NCBI RefSeq assembly: GCF_006345805.1
Contig: NW_021832776.1
Location: forward strand, 1 to 32,698
Length of the DNA stretch: 32,698 nucleotides
Direction: 5' to 3'
DNA from: Octopus sinensis
Taxonomy: Eukaryota
Under the pieces are notes generated by a model. That model was not told the DNA's origin and did not search any database. It saw only the letters and a program-made list of their open reading frames with translations. Made by a program: the position numbers and the translations under genes. This document shows, piece by piece, positions 2,997 to 32,503 of this stretch (positions within the stretch are counted from its first letter, which is position 1; each line of letters opens with the position of its first letter).

Positions 2997-3017
2997 ACCT
3001 GTTGTATATACATATAT

Positions 3018-3254
3018 ATTCTTTTATTTTTTTTATTTGTTTCTGTCATTTGACTGCGGCCATGCTGGAGCACCATCTTTAGTCGAGCAATTCGACTCCA
3101 GGACTTATTCTTTGTAAGTCTAGTACTTATTCTATTGGTCTCTCTTGTCAAACCACTAAGTGGCAGGTACGTAAACACACCAGCATCGGTTATCAAGTGA
3201 TGTTGGGGGGACAAACACAGACACACAAACACACACACACACACACACACACAT

Positions 3255-8903: not shown

Positions 8904-9216
8904 GAAGGCTTAGTGGTTAGGGTATATGGCTCATGATCATAAGGTTGTGAGTTCAATTCCCAGTAATGTGTTGTGTCCTTGAGCAAGATACTCTATTTCA
9001 CATTGCTCCAGTCCATTCAGCTGGCGAAAAATGCGGAGTATTTCAAAGGGCCAGCCTTGTCACATTCTGTGTCACACTGAATCTCCCCGAGAACTACTTT
9101 AAGGGTACATGTGTCTGGGAAGTGCTCGGCCACTTGCACATTAATTTCACGAGCAAGCTGTTCTGTTGATTGGATCAACTGGAACACTCGTCAGTGTAAC
9201 AGACAGAGTGCCAGTC
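8904..9216 (+). mobile_element. tRNA-derived SINE, family B
   Basis: A/B boxes and CCTTGAGCAAG core. Colinear with the reverse complement of 2673-2996. Confidence 0.85.
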
Positions 9217-9587: not shown

Positions 9588-9716
9588 ATATTAATAGTTA
9601 TTGCCAAGTTAACATGGCAGTCCAGAAAAATAGGACTAATGCTGCCGTTGAATGCTGCCAAGAGGCCATCGCCTCTAGCTAGCTAGACATATTAGCTTGG
9701 CAATAACTACTAATAT
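9588..9716. mobile_element. Small MITE-like inverted repeat
   Basis: 25-bp arms (9588-9612 / 9692-9716) match at 23/25. Interior has small hairpins (AGAGG-CCATCG-CCTCT). Confidence 0.55.
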
Positions 9717-9724
9717 ATATATAT

Positions 9725-10103
9725 TCTTTCATTCTTTTACTTGTTTCAGTCATTTGACTGCAGCCATGCTGGAGCACCACCTTTTAGTCAAAGAAATCAG
9801 CCCCAGGACTCTTTGTAAGGCTAGTACTTATTCTGTTAGTCTCTTTTGCTGACCTGCTAGGTTACAGGGACGTGAACACACCAACATCGGTTGTCAAGTG
9901 ATGGTGGCAGGGGAAACAAACACAGATACACACTTAAATATATATATATATATACTATGGGCTTCTTTCAGTTTCCATCCACCAGTTCCACTCACAAGGT
10001 TTTGGTCAGCCCAAGGCTATAGTAGAAGACACTTGTGCAAGGTGTTATACAGTGGGACTGAACCTGGAACCATGTGGTTGAAAAGCAAGCTTCTTACCAA
10101 ACA
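9725..10103 (-). mobile_element. SINE family E, near full length
   Basis: Both halves present, joined by an internal CA/TA microsatellite. Confidence 0.9.
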
Positions 10104-16065: not shown

Positions 16066-16119
<54 letters not shown>

Positions 16120-16218
16120 TGCATACATACACATACGTGCATACACACACACATATGCATACATAAAGGTGTGAGTGCATGCACAATACATACATATTAT
16201 ATATATGTATGTATATAA

Positions 16219-16275
<57 letters not shown>

Positions 16276-16430
16276 CACAAACATAAAGATGTGTGTATAT
16301 GCACACCCATAAGTATACATACATATATGTATATATATATATATAGACACCCACACACTCACACACACATACACACTCACACACATACATACACACATGC
16401 ATGCACACACAAACACACCACACACACACA
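16065..16430. repeat. Compound CA/TA microsatellite
   Basis: Directly visible. Confidence 0.95.
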
Positions 16431-22500: not shown

Positions 22501-22698
22501 GGTGAGCTGATGGAATTGTAAGGAGTGCTTAGCAGTTTTTCATCCATCTTTACATTCTGAGTTCAGATTCCACTGAGGTTGACTTTGCCTTTCATCCTTT
22601 CTGGGGTGATAAACTAAGACCTAGTTAAGCACTGGGGTCGATGTAATCAACTTGGCCCTTCCCTTGAACTTACTGGCCTTGTGCCAAAATTTGAAACC
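22501..22698 (+). mobile_element. SINE-like element, family D, followed by a (TCTA)n tract
   Basis: GAGTTCAGATTCC B-box-like motif, TTGCCTTTCATCCTTTC central motif, ends at a simple-repeat tract. Single full copy; a possible tail fragment lies at about 5085-5100 (-). Confidence 0.6.
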
Positions 22699-24013: not shown

Positions 24014-24235
24014 TTTTCTTTTTTTTTATATCTTTTTATTTATATCTGGGGCTCTACCTTGAAGTATTTCTAGTCAAAGGAATCAACTTCAGTACTTATT
24101 ATTTTCTTTTTCTTCTAAGTCTAGTACTATTTCTATCTTTCCCTTTTGCTGAACTGCTAAGTTATGGGAACGTAAACACACCAATGCTGGTTGTCAAACA
24201 GTGATGGGGACAAACACAGACACAAACACACACTC

Positions 24236-24280
<45 letters not shown>

Positions 24281-24425
24281 GGGCATTTTTCAGTTTCCTT
24301 CTACCACATCCACTCACAAGGATTTACTAAGTCGAAGGCTGTTGTAGAAGACTTTGCCCAAGGGGCTATTCAGTGGGATAGAACCCAGAGGTTGGGAAGG
24401 AAGCTTCTTATCACATATGAACACT
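24014..24425 (-). mobile_element. SINE family E nested in the fossil transposase
   Basis: Family motifs. The transposase reading resumes on either side (..DVIQC | TDNEILNSEDF..). Confidence 0.8.
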
Positions 24426-26576: not shown

Positions 26577-26700
26577 TTATTTCAGGTTCAGCCCCACAGT
26601 ATGTCAACATGGGAAAGGGTCTTCTACTATAGACATAGTAGTGACCAGAGCCTTGTGAGTGGATTTACTAAACAGAAACTGAAAGAAGCTTCTTATATAT
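26577..26700 (+). mobile_element. SINE family E, 5' half
   Basis: GGTTCAGCCCCAC..GTCTTCTACTATAG..CCTTGTGAGTGGATTT..GAAACTGAAAGAAGC. Confidence 0.75.
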
Positions 26701-27375
26701 CATCATCATCATCATCATCATTTAACGTCCGCTTTCCATGCTAGCATGGGTTGGACGGTTCAACTGGGGTCTGGGGAGCCCGAAAGCTGCACCAGTCCAG
26801 TCAGATCTGGCAGTGTTTCTACAGCTGGATGCCCTTCCTAACGCCAACCACTCCGAGAGTGTAGTGGGTGATTTTATGTGCCACCGACACAGGTGCCAGA
26901 CGAGGCTGACAAACGGCCACGCTCGGATGGTGTTTTTTTTTATGTGCCACCGACACAGGTGCCAGACGAGGCTGGCAGACGGCCACGCTCGGATGGTGTT
27001 TTTATGTGCCTCCGACACAGGTGCCAGACGAGGCTGGCAGACGGCCACGCTCGGATGGTGTTTTTTGTGCCACCGACACAGGTGCCAGACGAGGCTGGCA
27101 GACGGCCACGCTCGGATGGTGTTTTTATGTGCCACCGACACAGGTGCCAGATGAGGCTGGCAAACGGCCACGATCGGATGGTGCTTGTTACGTGCCCACA
27201 GCACGGAGGCCAGTCGATGCGGTACTGGCTACGGCCACGTTCGGATGGTTTTCTTATGTGCCACGTGCCACCGGCACTGGTACCACAAAGATACAAATTC
27301 CATTGATGTTCATCTATTTTGATTTGTTTTGATTTGATTTGATTTTCACTTGCCTCAACAGGTCTTCACAAGTGT

Positions 27376-27404: not shown

Positions 27405-27406
<2 letters not shown>

Positions 27407-27554
27407 ACAATTGCAGCGTGGAAGGTGTTTATAAGCCATTTAAGAAACACACAAAAGCCGTTCGATTCACTTCAACATTTAAGTTTAATTTGTCAAAATA
27501 TTTTCGTCGCTAAAATCCACGACCTGTTCACTGACAAAGTCCGTGCTGCATCTC
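27405..27554 (-). mobile_element. Short hammerhead-bearing element inserted in (TA)n
   Basis: 150 bp of complex, CpG-containing sequence bounded on both sides by pure (TA)n and containing the G3-C8 hammerhead motif. Confidence 0.55.
27489..27538 (-). ncRNA. Minimal type I hammerhead ribozyme motif with G3-C8 swapped core
   Basis: Minus strand reads UUUGUCA-GUGAACA-G-GUCG-UGGAUUUUAG-CGAC-GAA-AAUAUU-U-UGACAAA. This gives a perfect 7-bp stem I, core GUGAACA (CUGANGA with C3 and G8 exchanged), a 4-bp stem II, GAAA, a palindromic stem III (AAUAUU) and predicted cleavage after U at 27496. Confidence 0.7.
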
Positions 27555-28484: not shown

Positions 28485-28725
28485 CCATTCCCCTATAGAT
28501 TTTCTCATATATATGTATATGTGGGCAGGGGGTGTACATACTTACAGTATCCTACCAACAACTGACAACTAAAGGTTGTTTTACCCAAATTTGAGCTCAA
28601 TACTAAGTACCTAGCCACTGCTGACATCCTACTTATTGATATACCTAGATTCTTATGAATCCTGTAACTGATCACTATATATGTGTGTGTGTGTGTGTAT
28701 ATGAATGTATTTATTTATATGCATA

Positions 28726-28758
<33 letters not shown>

Positions 28759-28762
28759 GTAT

Positions 28763-29110
28763 ATAAATGAAAGAATGGAGTCGAACGACGATTTTGCTCT
28801 TCATGGTGCTGACATAAGTTCCTTGTCTTTCCTGATGAGATGGCGGCATAATGCACCCTTTATTCCTTCAGAATTAGGAATATGCACCCTTCGAAACATG
28901 TGTCGAGAGTAAAGGAATTTTGTTAAAATCGTCGTTCGACTCCATTCTTTCATTTATTCATAGTTAAAAAAAACACACAAATTTACACACGAGAACACGG
29001 GATCCCTGCCCTTGGCATATAGCTTCAACTGTGTTTTCTGATGTGAATTTGCTACCCAGGTATCGGTTAACCGAATTATCCATACTAGGATAATTCATTC
29101 ACCTTCTTAA
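28763..29110 (+). mobile_element. Hammerhead-bearing fold-back element, probable Penelope-like pLTR or retrozyme fragment
   Basis: Perfect 33-bp inverted repeat (28763-28795 / 28925-28957) enclosing the hammerhead. CpG-rich, embedded in TA/TG microsatellite. The PLE assignment is inference from the minimal hammerhead with palindromic stem III. Confidence 0.6.
28811..28924 (+). ncRNA. Type I hammerhead ribozyme motif with extended stem I and long stem II
   Basis: CUGAUGA at 28832-28838 and GAAAC at 28893-28897. Palindromic stem III ACAUGU, GUC triplet with cleavage after C28904. Stem I: CUUUC/GAGAG plus UUCCUU/AAGGAA, extendable to GACA/UGUU. Stem II: GAUGG..GCAUA/UAUGC..CCUUC with inner hairpin AUUCCU/AGGAAU. 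Confidence 0.75.
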
Positions 29111-30229
29111 ATATATATATATATATATATATGAATGTATGTATGTATTTATTTATCTATATGCATATGTGTGTGTATATTATATATATATATATATATA
29201 TATTATTTACATGCAAACACAGATAAGTGGCAGAGATGATTAGATTGATCAATAGATCAAGCAGCAGTGAAAAAAAAATCAATATGAAAAAGGTATGTGG
29301 TGACAGTATAAACACCACAACATCACTTCACTCATTTTCACATACATCACACTATCCCCATCGCCACCTTTGTTAACAAACTCGCCACCATCACAGCTTC
29401 TGTGTCCACTGCCACGATACCAATACCACCACCACCACCAACGCAGTACACCCACACAACTCCACACTCATACAACATCACATTGATGCAACATTCCACC
29501 TCACCATTACCAATAAAACAATGAACATTCTAGCAAGATAAATGGAATATGTTGAAAAGTTATTTCCACATTAAGTATTAGCAATAACCTCATTAAATAT
29601 AAATATGACCAGTGTGAGCAATGAGTGCTACAGTCTCTCTCTCTCTCTCTCTCTCTCTGTCCGTTTGTACGTCTGTATGTCTGTCTGTCTGCCAGTCTCC
29701 CCCCCTCTGTCTCTGTCTCTCTCTCTCTCTCTCTTTCTCCTGAAATATAAATTTGACCAGCATGAGTAGCTTGTTCTTTTGAGCTTCTCTCTTCTTTCTC
29801 TCTTTCTTACTCTCCCTCTCTATGTCTCTTTCTGTCTCTGTCTGTCTGTCTCTCTCTCTCTCTCTTTCTATAATTATATATATATCTGTGTGTGTATATA
29901 TATGTGCATGCATGTGTGTGTATATATGTATGTGCATGCATGAGTGTGTATGTGTGTGTGTGTGTGTGTGTGCGGGTATGCACATGATGTCTGAGTAAGA
30001 CGCATTCCATCAAAGCTGCTCTCTACTAAAGTAATGATAGCTTTATATCTTTACAAACACACACCCATACATGCATGCATATATACACAAACACATACAT
30101 GCACACATGGAGGGAAACAGACTGAAGATATATAAATAGATAAATGGATAAAAAGATAGATAGATTGATAGACTGTCTATATTATAAACACAATATCTAG
30201 GTACGTATACATAAGTTAAGTGAATCTGT

Positions 30230-32339: not shown

Positions 32340-32503
32340 GGAGTGGTGGGCGTTAGAAAGGGCATCCAGTTGTAGAAACTCTGCCAGATCAGATTGGAGT
32401 ATGGTGCAGCCATCTGGCTTGCCAGTTCTCAGTCAAACTGTCCAACCCATGCCACCATGGAAAGCAGACGTTAAACAATGATGATGATGATGATGATGAT
32501 GAT
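32340..32503 (+). mobile_element. Family F 3' end with (ATG)n tail
   Basis: GGCGTTAGAAAGGGCATCCAG..CCAACCCATGCC..GACGTTAAAC(ATG)n. Confidence 0.85.

What the first reader, a model, noticed from the sequence alone, without database searches (positions are those of the whole stretch)
28763..28957. Canonical hammerhead capping a ~195-nt fold-back with a perfect 33-bp inverted repeat
Seen: arms 28763-28795 and 28925-28957 are exact reverse complements. They run, via a 15-nt bulge, into the extended stem I of a CUGAUGA..GAAAC..GUC hammerhead, so the whole unit folds as one rod with the ribozyme at its tip. Stem II is unusually long (54 nt) and contains ATGCACCCTT twice. Inference: a young PLE pLTR or retrozyme-like RNA. 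Cleavage would fall inside a long duplex, which could also be an ADAR or Dicer substrate.
Basis: partly seen in the sequence, partly recalled or inferred. Interest (0 to 1): 0.85.

Follow-up and report, generated by a model that had tools for sequence, protein, structure and literature searches.

The report
Orphan hammerhead retrocopy with inverted end
This is a lone, gene-less copy of a hammerhead-ribozyme-carrying mobile element, of the Penelope-like or retrozyme kind, in an octopus (TA)n microsatellite. Its perfect 33-bp inverted repeat is most likely a scar of insertion rather than a designed RNA rod, so the finding is real but fairly ordinary.

Summary
Arms 28763-28795 and 28925-28957 are perfect reverse complements, and the 195 nt fold at -81.8 kcal/mol (z -10). 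A complete hammerhead core sits at the tip: CUGAUGA 28832-28838, 54-nt helix II, GAAAC 28893-28897, 2-bp helix III with a tetraloop, cleavage after C28904.

My descriptor hits only this site in the window, against 7 hits in 3000 shuffles. No Rfam hammerhead model hit was listed.

The window is octopus DNA. No reverse transcriptase or GIY-YIG domain was found in 1-31281, and there is no tandem or second copy.

About 87 kb of Octopus vulgaris sampled by chance holds two analogous loci. One has a hammerhead at the tip of a 340-nt foldback; the other has one hammerhead in each arm of a 99-nt inverted repeat. All three abut (TA)n.

Best reading (0.6): a short orphan retrocopy of a Penelope-like or retrozyme-type hammerhead module. 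The 33-bp arm would be an inverted partial second copy made at integration. The arms have no G-U pairs, whereas helix I has three.

Genome-wide copies could not be searched because the tool was shut, so conservation and activity are untested. The ADAR/Dicer idea is untested. It is a new member of a known kind.

The parts
28740..28762 (.). (TA)n microsatellite ending in TGTAT, directly abutting the left arm. It is the presumed AT-rich target.
   Evidence: a (TA)>=6 tract at 28740-28758 lies 4 nt from the arm. The random expectation of such abutment in this window is 1.6%.
28763..28795 (-). Left arm: exact reverse complement of 28925-28957. Read as an inverted partial second copy of the segment 3' of the ribozyme.
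   Evidence: I1: 33 nt, 100%; 32 of 32 folded pairs are Watson-Crick, with no G-U.
28796..28810 (+). 15-nt unpaired junction or bulge (GCTCTTCATGGTGCT) between the inverted arm and helix I. It is either the 5' end of the forward copy or filler.
28811..28831 (+). Helix I, 5' strand.
   Evidence: 19 pairs with 28905-28925 (16 Watson-Crick, 3 G-U), a 2x2 internal loop at 28825-26/28910-11 and a bulged 28815.
28832..28838 (+). Hammerhead core C3-A9 (CUGAUGA).
28839..28892 (+). Helix II, 54 nt and irregular: G-C, A-U, a U.U mismatch, G-C, G-C, a 2x2 loop, then 5 bp (GCAUA/UAUGC), a 12-nt bulge and the hairpin UAUUCCU/AGGAAUA. It contains the 10-nt direct repeat ATGCACCCTT at 28851-28860 and 28882-28891, spaced 31 nt apart.
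   Evidence: constrained fold. (D5).
28893..28904 (+). Core G12 A13 A14; helix III (A28896-U28903, C28897-G28902, loop AUGU); C17 = 28904. Predicted cleavage is between 28904 and 28905. ACAUGUGU is quasi-palindromic, giving an 8-bp dimer helix III with 2 G-U.
   Evidence: and direct reading. The feature set matches the description of metazoan type I hammerheads in PMC4209133 and PMC7229834.
28905..28924 (+). Helix I, 3' strand.
28925..28957 (+). Right arm: the 33 nt that follow helix I in the forward copy, which served as template for the inverted left arm.
28958..29105 (+). 148-nt unique segment between the foldback and the next (TA)n tract. It is possibly the 3' part of the inserted unit. 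It contains an AC-rich tract (28965-29002, 76% A+C) that forms the 5' arm of a 74-nt stem-loop at 28978-29051.
   Evidence: -38.5 kcal/mol, z -4.6; the pattern (TA)n - foldback - 63-153 nt - (TA)n recurs at all three octopus loci. Membership in the unit is inferred, not shown.
29106..29135 (.). (TA)n tract on the far side.

Best explanation
This is a solitary, ORF-less retrocopy of the hammerhead-bearing module of a Penelope-like element (PLE), or of a short non-autonomous retrozyme-like RNA mobilised by PLE machinery. It was inserted into a (TA)n microsatellite of an octopus genome.

The forward copy runs from about 28796 through the ribozyme (28811-28924) to at least 28957, and possibly to 29105.

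The 33-bp left arm is an inverted partial second copy of the stretch just 3' of helix I, made during the same integration event. Two mechanisms could produce it: reverse transcription primed from both cleaved target strands (twin-priming-like), or the reverse transcriptase switching back onto its own cDNA at the base of helix I.

The long 'rod' is therefore helix I, which is genuine ribozyme structure, prolonged by a DNA-level duplication.

Shown: the anatomy, the statistical non-randomness of the motif, the absence of a coding partner, the octopus host, the (TA)n abutment, and the recurrence of the architecture at two other loci. Inferred: PLE parentage, the integration mechanism, and any catalytic activity.
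For: 1. The hammerhead core and all three helices are complete. This is the only hit in the window, against 7 hits in 3000 shuffles.

2. Helix III (2 bp plus tetraloop, dimer-capable) and the U.U mismatch near the base of helix II match published descriptions of metazoan type I / PLE-associated hammerheads (PMC4209133; PMC7229834).

3. The host is an octopus.
- A repeat ORF in the window hits O. vulgaris proteins.
- Dispersed repeats in the window are 74-96% identical to O. vulgaris loci.
- O. vulgaris has 31 PLE families with 336 recent insertions (PMC13282606).

4. Published PLE hallmarks fit.
- 5' truncation, an inverted 5'-truncated copy adjacent at the 5' end, a bias toward (TA)n, and TSDs that are often undetectable in microsatellites (PMC8557442).
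- A purified PLE protein cleaves and extends both target strands at AT-rich DNA (PMC11167929).

5. The arms are 32/32 Watson-Crick, while helix I has 3 G-U, a loop and a bulge. This indicates a DNA-level origin for the arms.

6. In about 87 kb of O. vulgaris sampled for unrelated reasons, the relaxed descriptor found 3 motifs at 2 loci, against 0.29 expected.
- L008 16077-16280: a 99-nt x2 inverted repeat at 91%, with one hammerhead per arm.
- L011 403-746: a hammerhead at the tip of nested inverted repeats at 94% and 91%.
- All three loci abut a (TA)>=6 tract within 5 nt; random expectation is 0.3-2.6% each.

7. In the window element and in L011, the inverted arm begins 0-4 nt beyond the base of helix I.

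8. An AC-rich stem-loop lies 61+ nt 3' of the cut. This parallels the AC-rich stem-loop where PAc reverse transcription starts, 85-92 nt 3' of its hammerhead cut.
Against: - No other copy of this sequence family was found, so neither motif conservation nor a link to an RT/GIY-YIG ORF could be tested. Searches covered the window, about 87 kb of O. vulgaris, and the viral, metagenome and prokaryote-genome collections. The search of the window's own genome was shut.
- No RT or EN domain lies within 1-31281 of the window, within +/-2.5 kb of the L008 locus, or in the ~5 kb (L014 5000-9981) around the L011 locus. All three octopus loci are orphans.
- No Rfam hammerhead model was listed for any of the three.
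- The 54-nt helix II with an internal 31-nt duplication is atypical and may cripple loop-loop contacts.
- The classical PLE inverted copy carries the element's 3' terminus. Here a unique 148 nt separates the forward arm from the next (TA)n, so the exact mechanism is unsettled.
- The three octopus loci share no sequence similarity.
Confidence: 0.6

Rival explanations
1. It is a monomer locus of a non-LTR retrozyme that is itself functional. It would be transcribed, self-cleaved (as a dimer or in trans), ligated into a small circular RNA, and able to seed new copies.
For: - It has a type I hammerhead with invertebrate-like helix III and low GC (39%).
- The possible unit length, 28796-29105 = 310 nt, lies within the 170-400 nt reported for metazoan retrozymes (PMC7229834).
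- Monomer copies are common in some families (bioRxiv 10.64898/2026.07.22.740005).
- There is no ORF nearby.
Against: - There is no tandem copy. TRF up to period 500 finds none, blast finds none, and the similarity of 28796-28957 to 28958-29110 is not above shuffles (p about 0.18).
- A single hammerhead cannot release a unit-length RNA.
- The 310-nt unit folded as a circle gives only z -3.2 and is not a rod.
- The same preprint regards monomers as non-transposing offspring.
Confidence: 0.13
2. It is a MITE or foldback DNA transposon with 33-bp (or 30-bp) terminal inverted repeats that happens to carry, or has captured, a hammerhead in its centre.
For: - It has perfect terminal inverted repeats, is small (195 bp), AT-rich and near-palindromic overall.
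- A TA...TA flank is formally possible if the element is taken as 28766-28954.
- O. vulgaris has many Tc1-Mariner and unclassified TIR families.
Against: - No unambiguous target-site duplication exists. The only candidates (AT or TA) lie inside the palindrome itself.
- The probability of a full hammerhead core in register at the tip of a random foldback is about 3e-8 by my estimate.
- The two O. vulgaris loci have different arm lengths (33, 79+43 and 99 nt). In L008 the arms include the ribozyme. That fits variable inverted copying, not fixed TIRs.
- No second copy with these arms was found.
Confidence: 0.08
3. It is a functional hairpin RNA gene. The ribozyme-tipped duplex of more than 50 bp would be a selected substrate for ADAR editing or Dicer processing, with hammerhead cleavage opening the loop.
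For: - A 33-bp perfect duplex plus a 19-bp imperfect one is long enough for ADAR or Dicer.
- Cephalopods edit RNA heavily (general knowledge).
- The architecture recurs at three loci.
Against: - There is no evidence of transcription, and none of the searched Rfam families matches beyond microsatellite artefacts.
- The three loci share no sequence, and their arms decay neutrally (91-94% in O. vulgaris).
- After cleavage the products would stay paired, favouring religation.
Confidence: 0.04
4. It is a chance hammerhead-like motif inside an unrelated palindrome.
For: No Rfam hammerhead hit even at E<=10. Helix II is atypical. The family could not be shown to be conserved.
Against: - The descriptor gives 7 hits in 3000 shuffles against 1 real hit, even before counting the 19-bp helix I.
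- All invariant core positions are present, together with a G10.1-C11.1 pair, an A15.1-U16.1 pair and C17.
- Helix III is dimer-capable.
- Independent hammerhead foldbacks exist in O. vulgaris.
Confidence: 0.03

Closest known systems
Hammerheads of Penelope-like elements: pLTR / 3'-end hammerheads, truncated solo copies and dual opposite-strand copies (Cervera & de la Pena 2014, PMC4209133; Craig et al. 2021, PMC8557442)
   Same: - Type I topology, a weak helix III with a dimer-capable loop, and helix II longer than in canonical metazoan hammerheads.
- Most genomic copies are solitary.
- Pairs occur on opposite strands 100-700 bp apart.
- 5' truncation, an inverted 5'-truncated copy producing inverted repeats, and insertion into (TA)n.
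   Different: - No RT/GIY-YIG ORF or second pLTR within 31 kb.
- Helix I is long (19 pairs) rather than 4-5 bp.
- Helix II is 54 nt with an internal duplication.
- The inverted copy is only 33 nt and lies entirely 3' of the ribozyme.
- Homology to any PLE could not be tested.
PAc (Poseidon of Anolis carolinensis) integration biochemistry (Frangieh et al. 2024, PMC11167929)
   Same: - AT-rich target.
- Both target strands are cleaved and extended, a ready source of head-to-head copies.
- The template is not hammerhead-cleaved.
- An AC-rich stem-loop lies tens of nt 3' of the hammerhead cut.
   Different: - In PAc the ORF starts in helix II. Here the frame from the ATG inside CUGAUGA stops after 26 codons.
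- The PAc 'tail' is 30-40 bp. Here the asymmetric extra segment is 148 nt.
Metazoan non-LTR retrozymes (Cervera & de la Pena 2020, PMC7229834; Li, Clavereau & Pollet 2026 preprint)
   Same: Type I hammerhead with a 2-bp helix III plus tetraloop, low GC, a unit of a few hundred nt, no ORF, and monomer derivatives scattered in the genome.
   Different: No tandem array. No evidence of circular RNA. The perfect inverted arm is not a retrozyme feature.
L1 twin-priming inversions (Ostertag & Kazazian 2001; cited from my own knowledge)
   Same: An inverted segment adjoins a forward 3' segment within one insertion, produced by priming from the second target strand.
   Different: L1 inversions usually invert sequence that lies 5' of the forward part. 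Here the inverted piece duplicates 33 nt inside the forward copy.
Schistosoma Sm-alpha / Sj-alpha SINE-like hammerhead elements (as summarised in PMC6765202)
   Same: A short ORF-less dispersed element carrying a type I hammerhead.
   Different: Those have a pol III-type promoter and occur in repetitive arrays. No promoter boxes or arrays were identified here.

Membership tests
Hammerhead ribozyme, type I | Invariant core: C3 U4 G5 A6 N7 G8 A9, G12 A13 A14, A15.1-U16.1, H17 | tested here: met
   CUGAUGA at 28832-38; GAA at 28893-95; A28896-U28903; C28904.
Hammerhead ribozyme, type I | Three helices in the right order around the core, with helix I open-ended | tested here: met
   Helix I has 19 pairs, helix II is closed by G28839-C28892, and helix III is 2 bp plus a tetraloop. 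It is the only descriptor hit in the window, against 7 in 3000 shuffles.
Hammerhead ribozyme, type I | Score at or above the Rfam covariance-model threshold | tested here: not met
   No hammerhead family was listed at gathering score or at E<=10. The same models also give no listed hit for the two O. vulgaris hammerhead-like loci, so the test is insensitive to this class.
Hammerhead ribozyme, type I | Loop 1 - loop 2 tertiary contacts | tested here: inconclusive
   Internal loops lie 5 bp out on helix I (28825-26/28910-11) and 5 positions out on helix II, which is the right geometry. The sequences could not be matched to known contact motifs, and helix II continues for 40 more nt.
Hammerhead ribozyme, type I | Conservation of the core and covariation of the helices among homologues | not testable with these tools
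   No homologous copy was retrievable. The genome search was shut, and all other collections gave only chance hits.
Hammerhead ribozyme, type I | Site-specific self-cleavage | not testable with these tools
   Needs in vitro transcription.
Penelope-like element (full element or its pLTR) | ORF with a telomerase-like RT and a GIY-YIG endonuclease, flanked by pLTRs | tested here: not met
   Six-frame Pfam scan of 1-31281 found no RT or GIY-YIG, only low-complexity noise. At most this is a severely 5'-truncated or non-autonomous derivative.
Penelope-like element (truncated insertion) | A hammerhead near the 3' end, 5' truncation, and an adjacent inverted 5'-truncated copy | tested here: met
   The ribozyme lies 53 nt from the outer end of the right arm. 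A 33-nt inverted copy sits at the 5' side. The features are as listed in PMC8557442.
Penelope-like element (truncated insertion) | Insertion into AT-rich or (TA)n DNA | tested here: met
   A (TA)n tract lies 4 nt from the left arm; random expectation is 1.6%.
Penelope-like element (truncated insertion) | Sequence homology to the 3' region or pLTR of an autonomous PLE of the same genome | not testable with these tools
   No access to the genome or to a repeat library.
Non-LTR retrozyme | Head-to-tail tandem repeats of a 170-400-nt unit, each with a type I hammerhead | tested here: not met
   There is a single hammerhead in the window, no tandem array, and no significant similarity between 28796-28957 and 28958-29110.
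Non-LTR retrozyme | Expression as a self-paired circular RNA | not testable with these tools
   No transcriptome data. The 310-nt candidate unit folded as a circle gives z -3.2 only.
MITE / foldback DNA transposon | Terminal inverted repeats | tested here: met
   33-bp perfect arms.
MITE / foldback DNA transposon | Target-site duplication of fixed length flanking the TIRs | tested here: not met
   Flanks read ...TATGTAT | element | TCATAG.... Only AT or TA dinucleotides that are part of the palindrome can be read as a TSD. The longer flanking 'direct repeat' (28694-28762 vs 29126-29205) scores no better than other microsatellite-like sites (93 vs 90, 88 and 83).
MITE / foldback DNA transposon | Many copies sharing the same termini | tested here: inconclusive
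   None in the window or in about 87 kb of O. vulgaris. The genome itself could not be searched.

The most novel reading that the evidence does not exclude
Hammerhead-bearing foldbacks next to (TA)n may be an abundant and so far undescribed structural class in octopus genomes. I saw 3 loci in about 120 kb, and no Rfam hammerhead hit was listed for any of them. Helix I of the ribozyme would direct where the reverse transcriptase turns back. The resulting ribozyme-tipped long hairpins, if transcribed, would supply the dsRNA pool that cephalopod ADARs or Dicer act on. Under this reading the inverted arm is part of the element's biology rather than a scar.
Probability: 0.07. Interest if true: 0.65.

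Novelty: new member of a known kind. Interest (0 to 1): 0.27.

Why it matters
On its own it matters little. Solitary hammerhead motifs from truncated Penelope-like elements are known to litter invertebrate genomes.

Three modest points of value remain:
1. It shows that cephalopod hammerheads of this class were not picked up by the Rfam hammerhead models, so they are probably under-counted.
2. With the two O. vulgaris loci, it gives genomic examples in which the inverted copy starts at the base of helix I. That constrains how PLE-type reverse transcription resolves its 5' end (both-strand priming versus snap-back).
3. Such insertions create perfect long hairpins in an animal group with heavy RNA editing, which could be checked against existing editing maps.

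Tried and rejected
- Exact-pattern scans:
  - Arm 20-mer in viral contigs: nothing.
  - Arm 20-mer in metagenomes: 4 hits, all about 60% GC bacterial coding DNA, so chance.
  - Core-spanning 20-mer in prokaryote genomes: 3 hits in bacterial MAGs; the one inspected (L005) is bacterial coding DNA, i.e. chance. The window's own contig is not there.
  - Two more patterns in viral contigs: nothing.
- Peptide trick, using ORFs across the element as protein queries to catch called ORFs on other copies: no candidates.
- Exact look-up of ten window ORFs: none on record.
- Long target-site duplication (28694-28762 vs 29126-29205): rejected. The similarity is no better than to other cryptically simple sites in the window.
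- Partial tandem second unit downstream (CTGATGTGAA at about 29034): rejected. The alignment score is not above shuffles.
- Second hammerhead-like site on the minus strand near 9148-9194 (CTGACGA...GAAA): fails helix I and III in both descriptors, so chance.
- Rfam miRNA hits on 28705-28775: TG/TA microsatellite artefacts far below gathering score.
- ORFs next to the O. vulgaris L011 locus as possible PLE genes: they are C2H2 zinc-finger genes.
- Assembly artefact: considered unlikely. The palindrome is asymmetric (129-nt unique centre, 15-nt one-sided bulge), unlike read-chimera palindromes.

Full report
**Observation**

The region was read directly.
- Arms 28763-28795 and 28925-28957 are exact reverse complements: 33 nt with 129 nt between them.
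- As RNA, the 195 nt fold at -81.8 kcal/mol, against -41.2 +/- 4.0 for dinucleotide shuffles (z -10.2). The opposite strand folds almost as well (-76.9, z -9.8), as expected for a DNA palindrome.

The hammerhead parts are in register:
- CUGAUGA at 28832-28838.
- Helix II of 54 nt (28839-28892), closed by G-C.
- GAA at 28893-28895.
- Helix III made of A28896-U28903 and C28897-G28902 with loop AUGU.
- C17 at 28904.
- Helix I starting with C28831-G28905.

Helix I has 19 pairs (16 Watson-Crick, 3 G-U), a 2x2 internal loop and one bulged base. It continues without a break on its 3' side into the 33-bp arm. On the 5' side, 15 nt (28796-28810) are unpaired.

ATGCACCCTT occurs at 28851-28860 and 28882-28891. 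The second copy forms the 3' strand of helix II. The first sits in a bulge, so helix II carries a 31-nt internal duplication or insertion.

A fold forced to keep the core open and the three helices closed costs only 2.8 kcal/mol more than the unconstrained optimum.

**Is it chance?**

I wrote a descriptor with these parts: CUGANGA; the first two helix II pairs plus at least 4 of 5; GAAA; A15.1-U16.1 plus one more pair and a 3-11 nt loop; H17 not G; and five contiguous helix I pairs.
- It hits only this site on either strand of the real window.
- It hits 7 times in 3000 dinucleotide shuffles of the window.

Given a pre-existing foldback, my estimate is about 3e-8 for finding the two core halves and a closed helix II in register at its tip. 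The motif is therefore a hammerhead by descent.

No Rfam hammerhead family was listed, either at gathering score or at E<=10 on a 321-nt slice. The same is true for two other octopus hammerhead-like loci. I therefore read this as model insensitivity to long helix II and minimal helix III, not as evidence against the motif.

**Context in the window**

The window is AT-rich (35% GC) and packed with microsatellites.
- No second copy of the arms or of the 363 nt around them exists in it.
- Tandem Repeats Finder sees no array here.
- Six-frame translation of 1-31281 against Pfam gives no reverse transcriptase, no GIY-YIG endonuclease and nothing else credible.

The ribozyme is therefore an orphan.

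A look-alike 'direct repeat' flanking 28763-29125 scores no better than other cryptically simple sites in the window. I do not count it as a target-site duplication.

**Host**

- An ORF over the 62-nt tandem array at 26867-27264 matches three 'Hypothetical predicted protein [Octopus vulgaris]' entries.
- Several dispersed repeats of the window are 74-96% identical to stretches of O. vulgaris chromosomes.

The window is octopus DNA, but the fetched loci are not its orthologues.

According to a 2026 repeat annotation, O. vulgaris has 31 Penelope-like families with 336 recently active insertions (PMC13282606). Penelope is among the families expanded in coleoids (PMC8967140).

**Relatives by architecture**

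Scans of the viral, metagenome and prokaryote-genome collections gave nothing or only hits in bacterial sequence; those I inspected are chance matches.

The roughly 87 kb of O. vulgaris that I had fetched for host identification nevertheless contained three hammerhead motifs at two loci under a relaxed descriptor. Shuffles predict 0.29.
- L008: a 99-nt inverted repeat (16077-16175 / 16182-16280, 91%, 6-nt spacer). Each arm has CUGAUGA, a 7-bp helix II, GAAA and a 2-bp helix III. It abuts a (TA)n tract.
- L011: CUGAAGA ... GAAA ... A595 sits at the tip of nested inverted repeats (454-532/606-684 at 94%; 403-445/704-746 at 91%). It folds at -124.6 kcal/mol (z -18) and again abuts (TA)n.

Neither locus has an RT or EN domain in the ~5 kb scanned around it; the neighbouring ORFs are C2H2 zinc-finger genes and an atypical PKC. 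Neither shares sequence with the window element.

All three foldbacks lie within 5 nt of a (TA)>=6 tract on one side (random expectation 0.3-2.6% per locus). Each has a second (TA)n tract 63-153 nt away on the other side.

In the window element and in L011, the inverted arm begins 0-4 nt past the base of helix I, with 15 and 8 unpaired nt on the 5' side.

**Interpretation**

Published descriptions fit this anatomy:
- Metazoan type I hammerheads have a 1-2 bp helix III capped by a small palindromic loop and act as dimers.
- PLE-associated variants have a longer helix II.
- Most copies are solitary remnants of truncated PLEs.
- Pairs occur on opposite strands 100-700 bp apart (PMC4209133).
- PLE insertions are 5'-truncated and often carry an inverted 5'-truncated copy at the 5' end, giving inverted repeats.
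- They favour microsatellites such as (TA)n, which hides target-site duplications (PMC8557442).
- A purified PLE protein cleaves and extends both strands of AT-rich targets, uses uncleaved RNA, and starts reverse transcription in an AC-rich stem-loop 85-92 nt downstream of the hammerhead cut (PMC11167929).

In the window, an AC-rich tract (28965-29002, 76% A+C) forms one arm of a 74-nt stem-loop that starts 74 nt (the tract itself 61 nt) downstream of the cut.

I therefore read the locus as one integration event of a PLE-type RNA, either a severely truncated PLE or a short non-autonomous retrozyme-like relative.
- The forward cDNA ran through the ribozyme and ended about 15 nt beyond helix I.
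- A second, inverted cDNA of 33 nt was joined to it.
- The arms contain no G-U pair, whereas helix I has three plus a loop and a bulge. This supports a DNA-level origin for the arms and an RNA-level origin for helix I.

Two mechanisms remain open:
- Priming from both target strands predicts symmetric outer ends.
- Twin priming or snap-back nucleated by helix I explains the asymmetric 148-nt segment up to the next (TA)n.

**What is not shown**

- Parentage from a PLE.
- Conservation of the core in other copies.
- Transcription.
- Cleavage.

'Young' is weak: 0 mismatches in 33 bp excludes only divergence above about 9%. If the locus were transcribed, cleavage at 28904/28905 would leave products held by more than 50 bp, favouring religation. 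ADAR or Dicer action is possible in principle but untested.

**Comparison and verdict**

The element works like, and most likely derives from, the hammerhead module of Penelope-like elements and animal retrozymes.
- It fails the membership tests for a complete PLE (no ORF) and for a retrozyme array (no tandem).
- It passes the sequence-level tests for a type I hammerhead, except for the Rfam score.

It is a new member of a known kind. Its interest is modest, raised slightly by the recurrent helix-I-anchored foldback architecture seen in octopus.

Noticed in passing
window 26699-27329 (tandem array 26867-27264): A dispersed repeat carries a 62-nt tandem array (6.3 copies). Copies 81-92% identical occur in O. 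vulgaris, where ORFs over them are annotated as 'Hypothetical predicted protein'. These are probably spurious gene models.
   Followed up: partly
window 3003-3254, 9714-10103, 22526-22696, 24106-24415, 27405-27486, 32340-32497: Dispersed (SINE-like) repeats shared with O. vulgaris loci at 74-96% identity. They identify the window as octopus DNA.
   Followed up: partly
L008 16077-16280 (O. vulgaris OX597839.1): A 99-nt x2 inverted repeat at 91% with one hammerhead motif in each arm, abutting (TA)n. The first helix I pair differs between the arms as U-A versus C-G, and two helix II pairs differ only by G-U wobbles.
   Followed up: partly
L011 403-746 (O. vulgaris OX597841.1), inside a C2H2 zinc-finger gene cluster: A hammerhead (CUGAAGA 547, GAAA 581, cleavage after A595; helix III AUUGGACCAAU nearly palindromic) sits at the tip of a 340-nt nested foldback next to (TA)n. 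No Rfam hammerhead hit was listed.
   Followed up: partly
window 28965-29051: An AC-rich tract (76% A+C) forms the 5' arm of a 74-nt stem-loop just downstream of the foldback. The 148-nt segment folds with z -4.6. It recalls the AC-rich stem-loop where PAc reverse transcription starts.
   Followed up: partly
window 28752-28766 and L011 about 403-420: The left junctions of two unrelated hammerhead foldbacks read alike: (TA)n-TGTAT|ATAA.... This could be coincidence or a target preference.
   Followed up: no
window about 9148-9194, minus strand: CTGACGA...GAAA looks hammerhead-like but has no helix I or III. It is a chance match.
   Followed up: yes
window 28705-28775: Rfam miRNA models (mir-297 and others) match the TG/TA microsatellite at scores far below gathering. 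These are low-complexity artefacts.
   Followed up: yes
whole window: Microsatellite density is very high: TRF lists 93 rows in 32.7 kb and there are 45 (TA)>=6 tracts. No protein domain was detected in six frames of 1-31281.
   Followed up: yes
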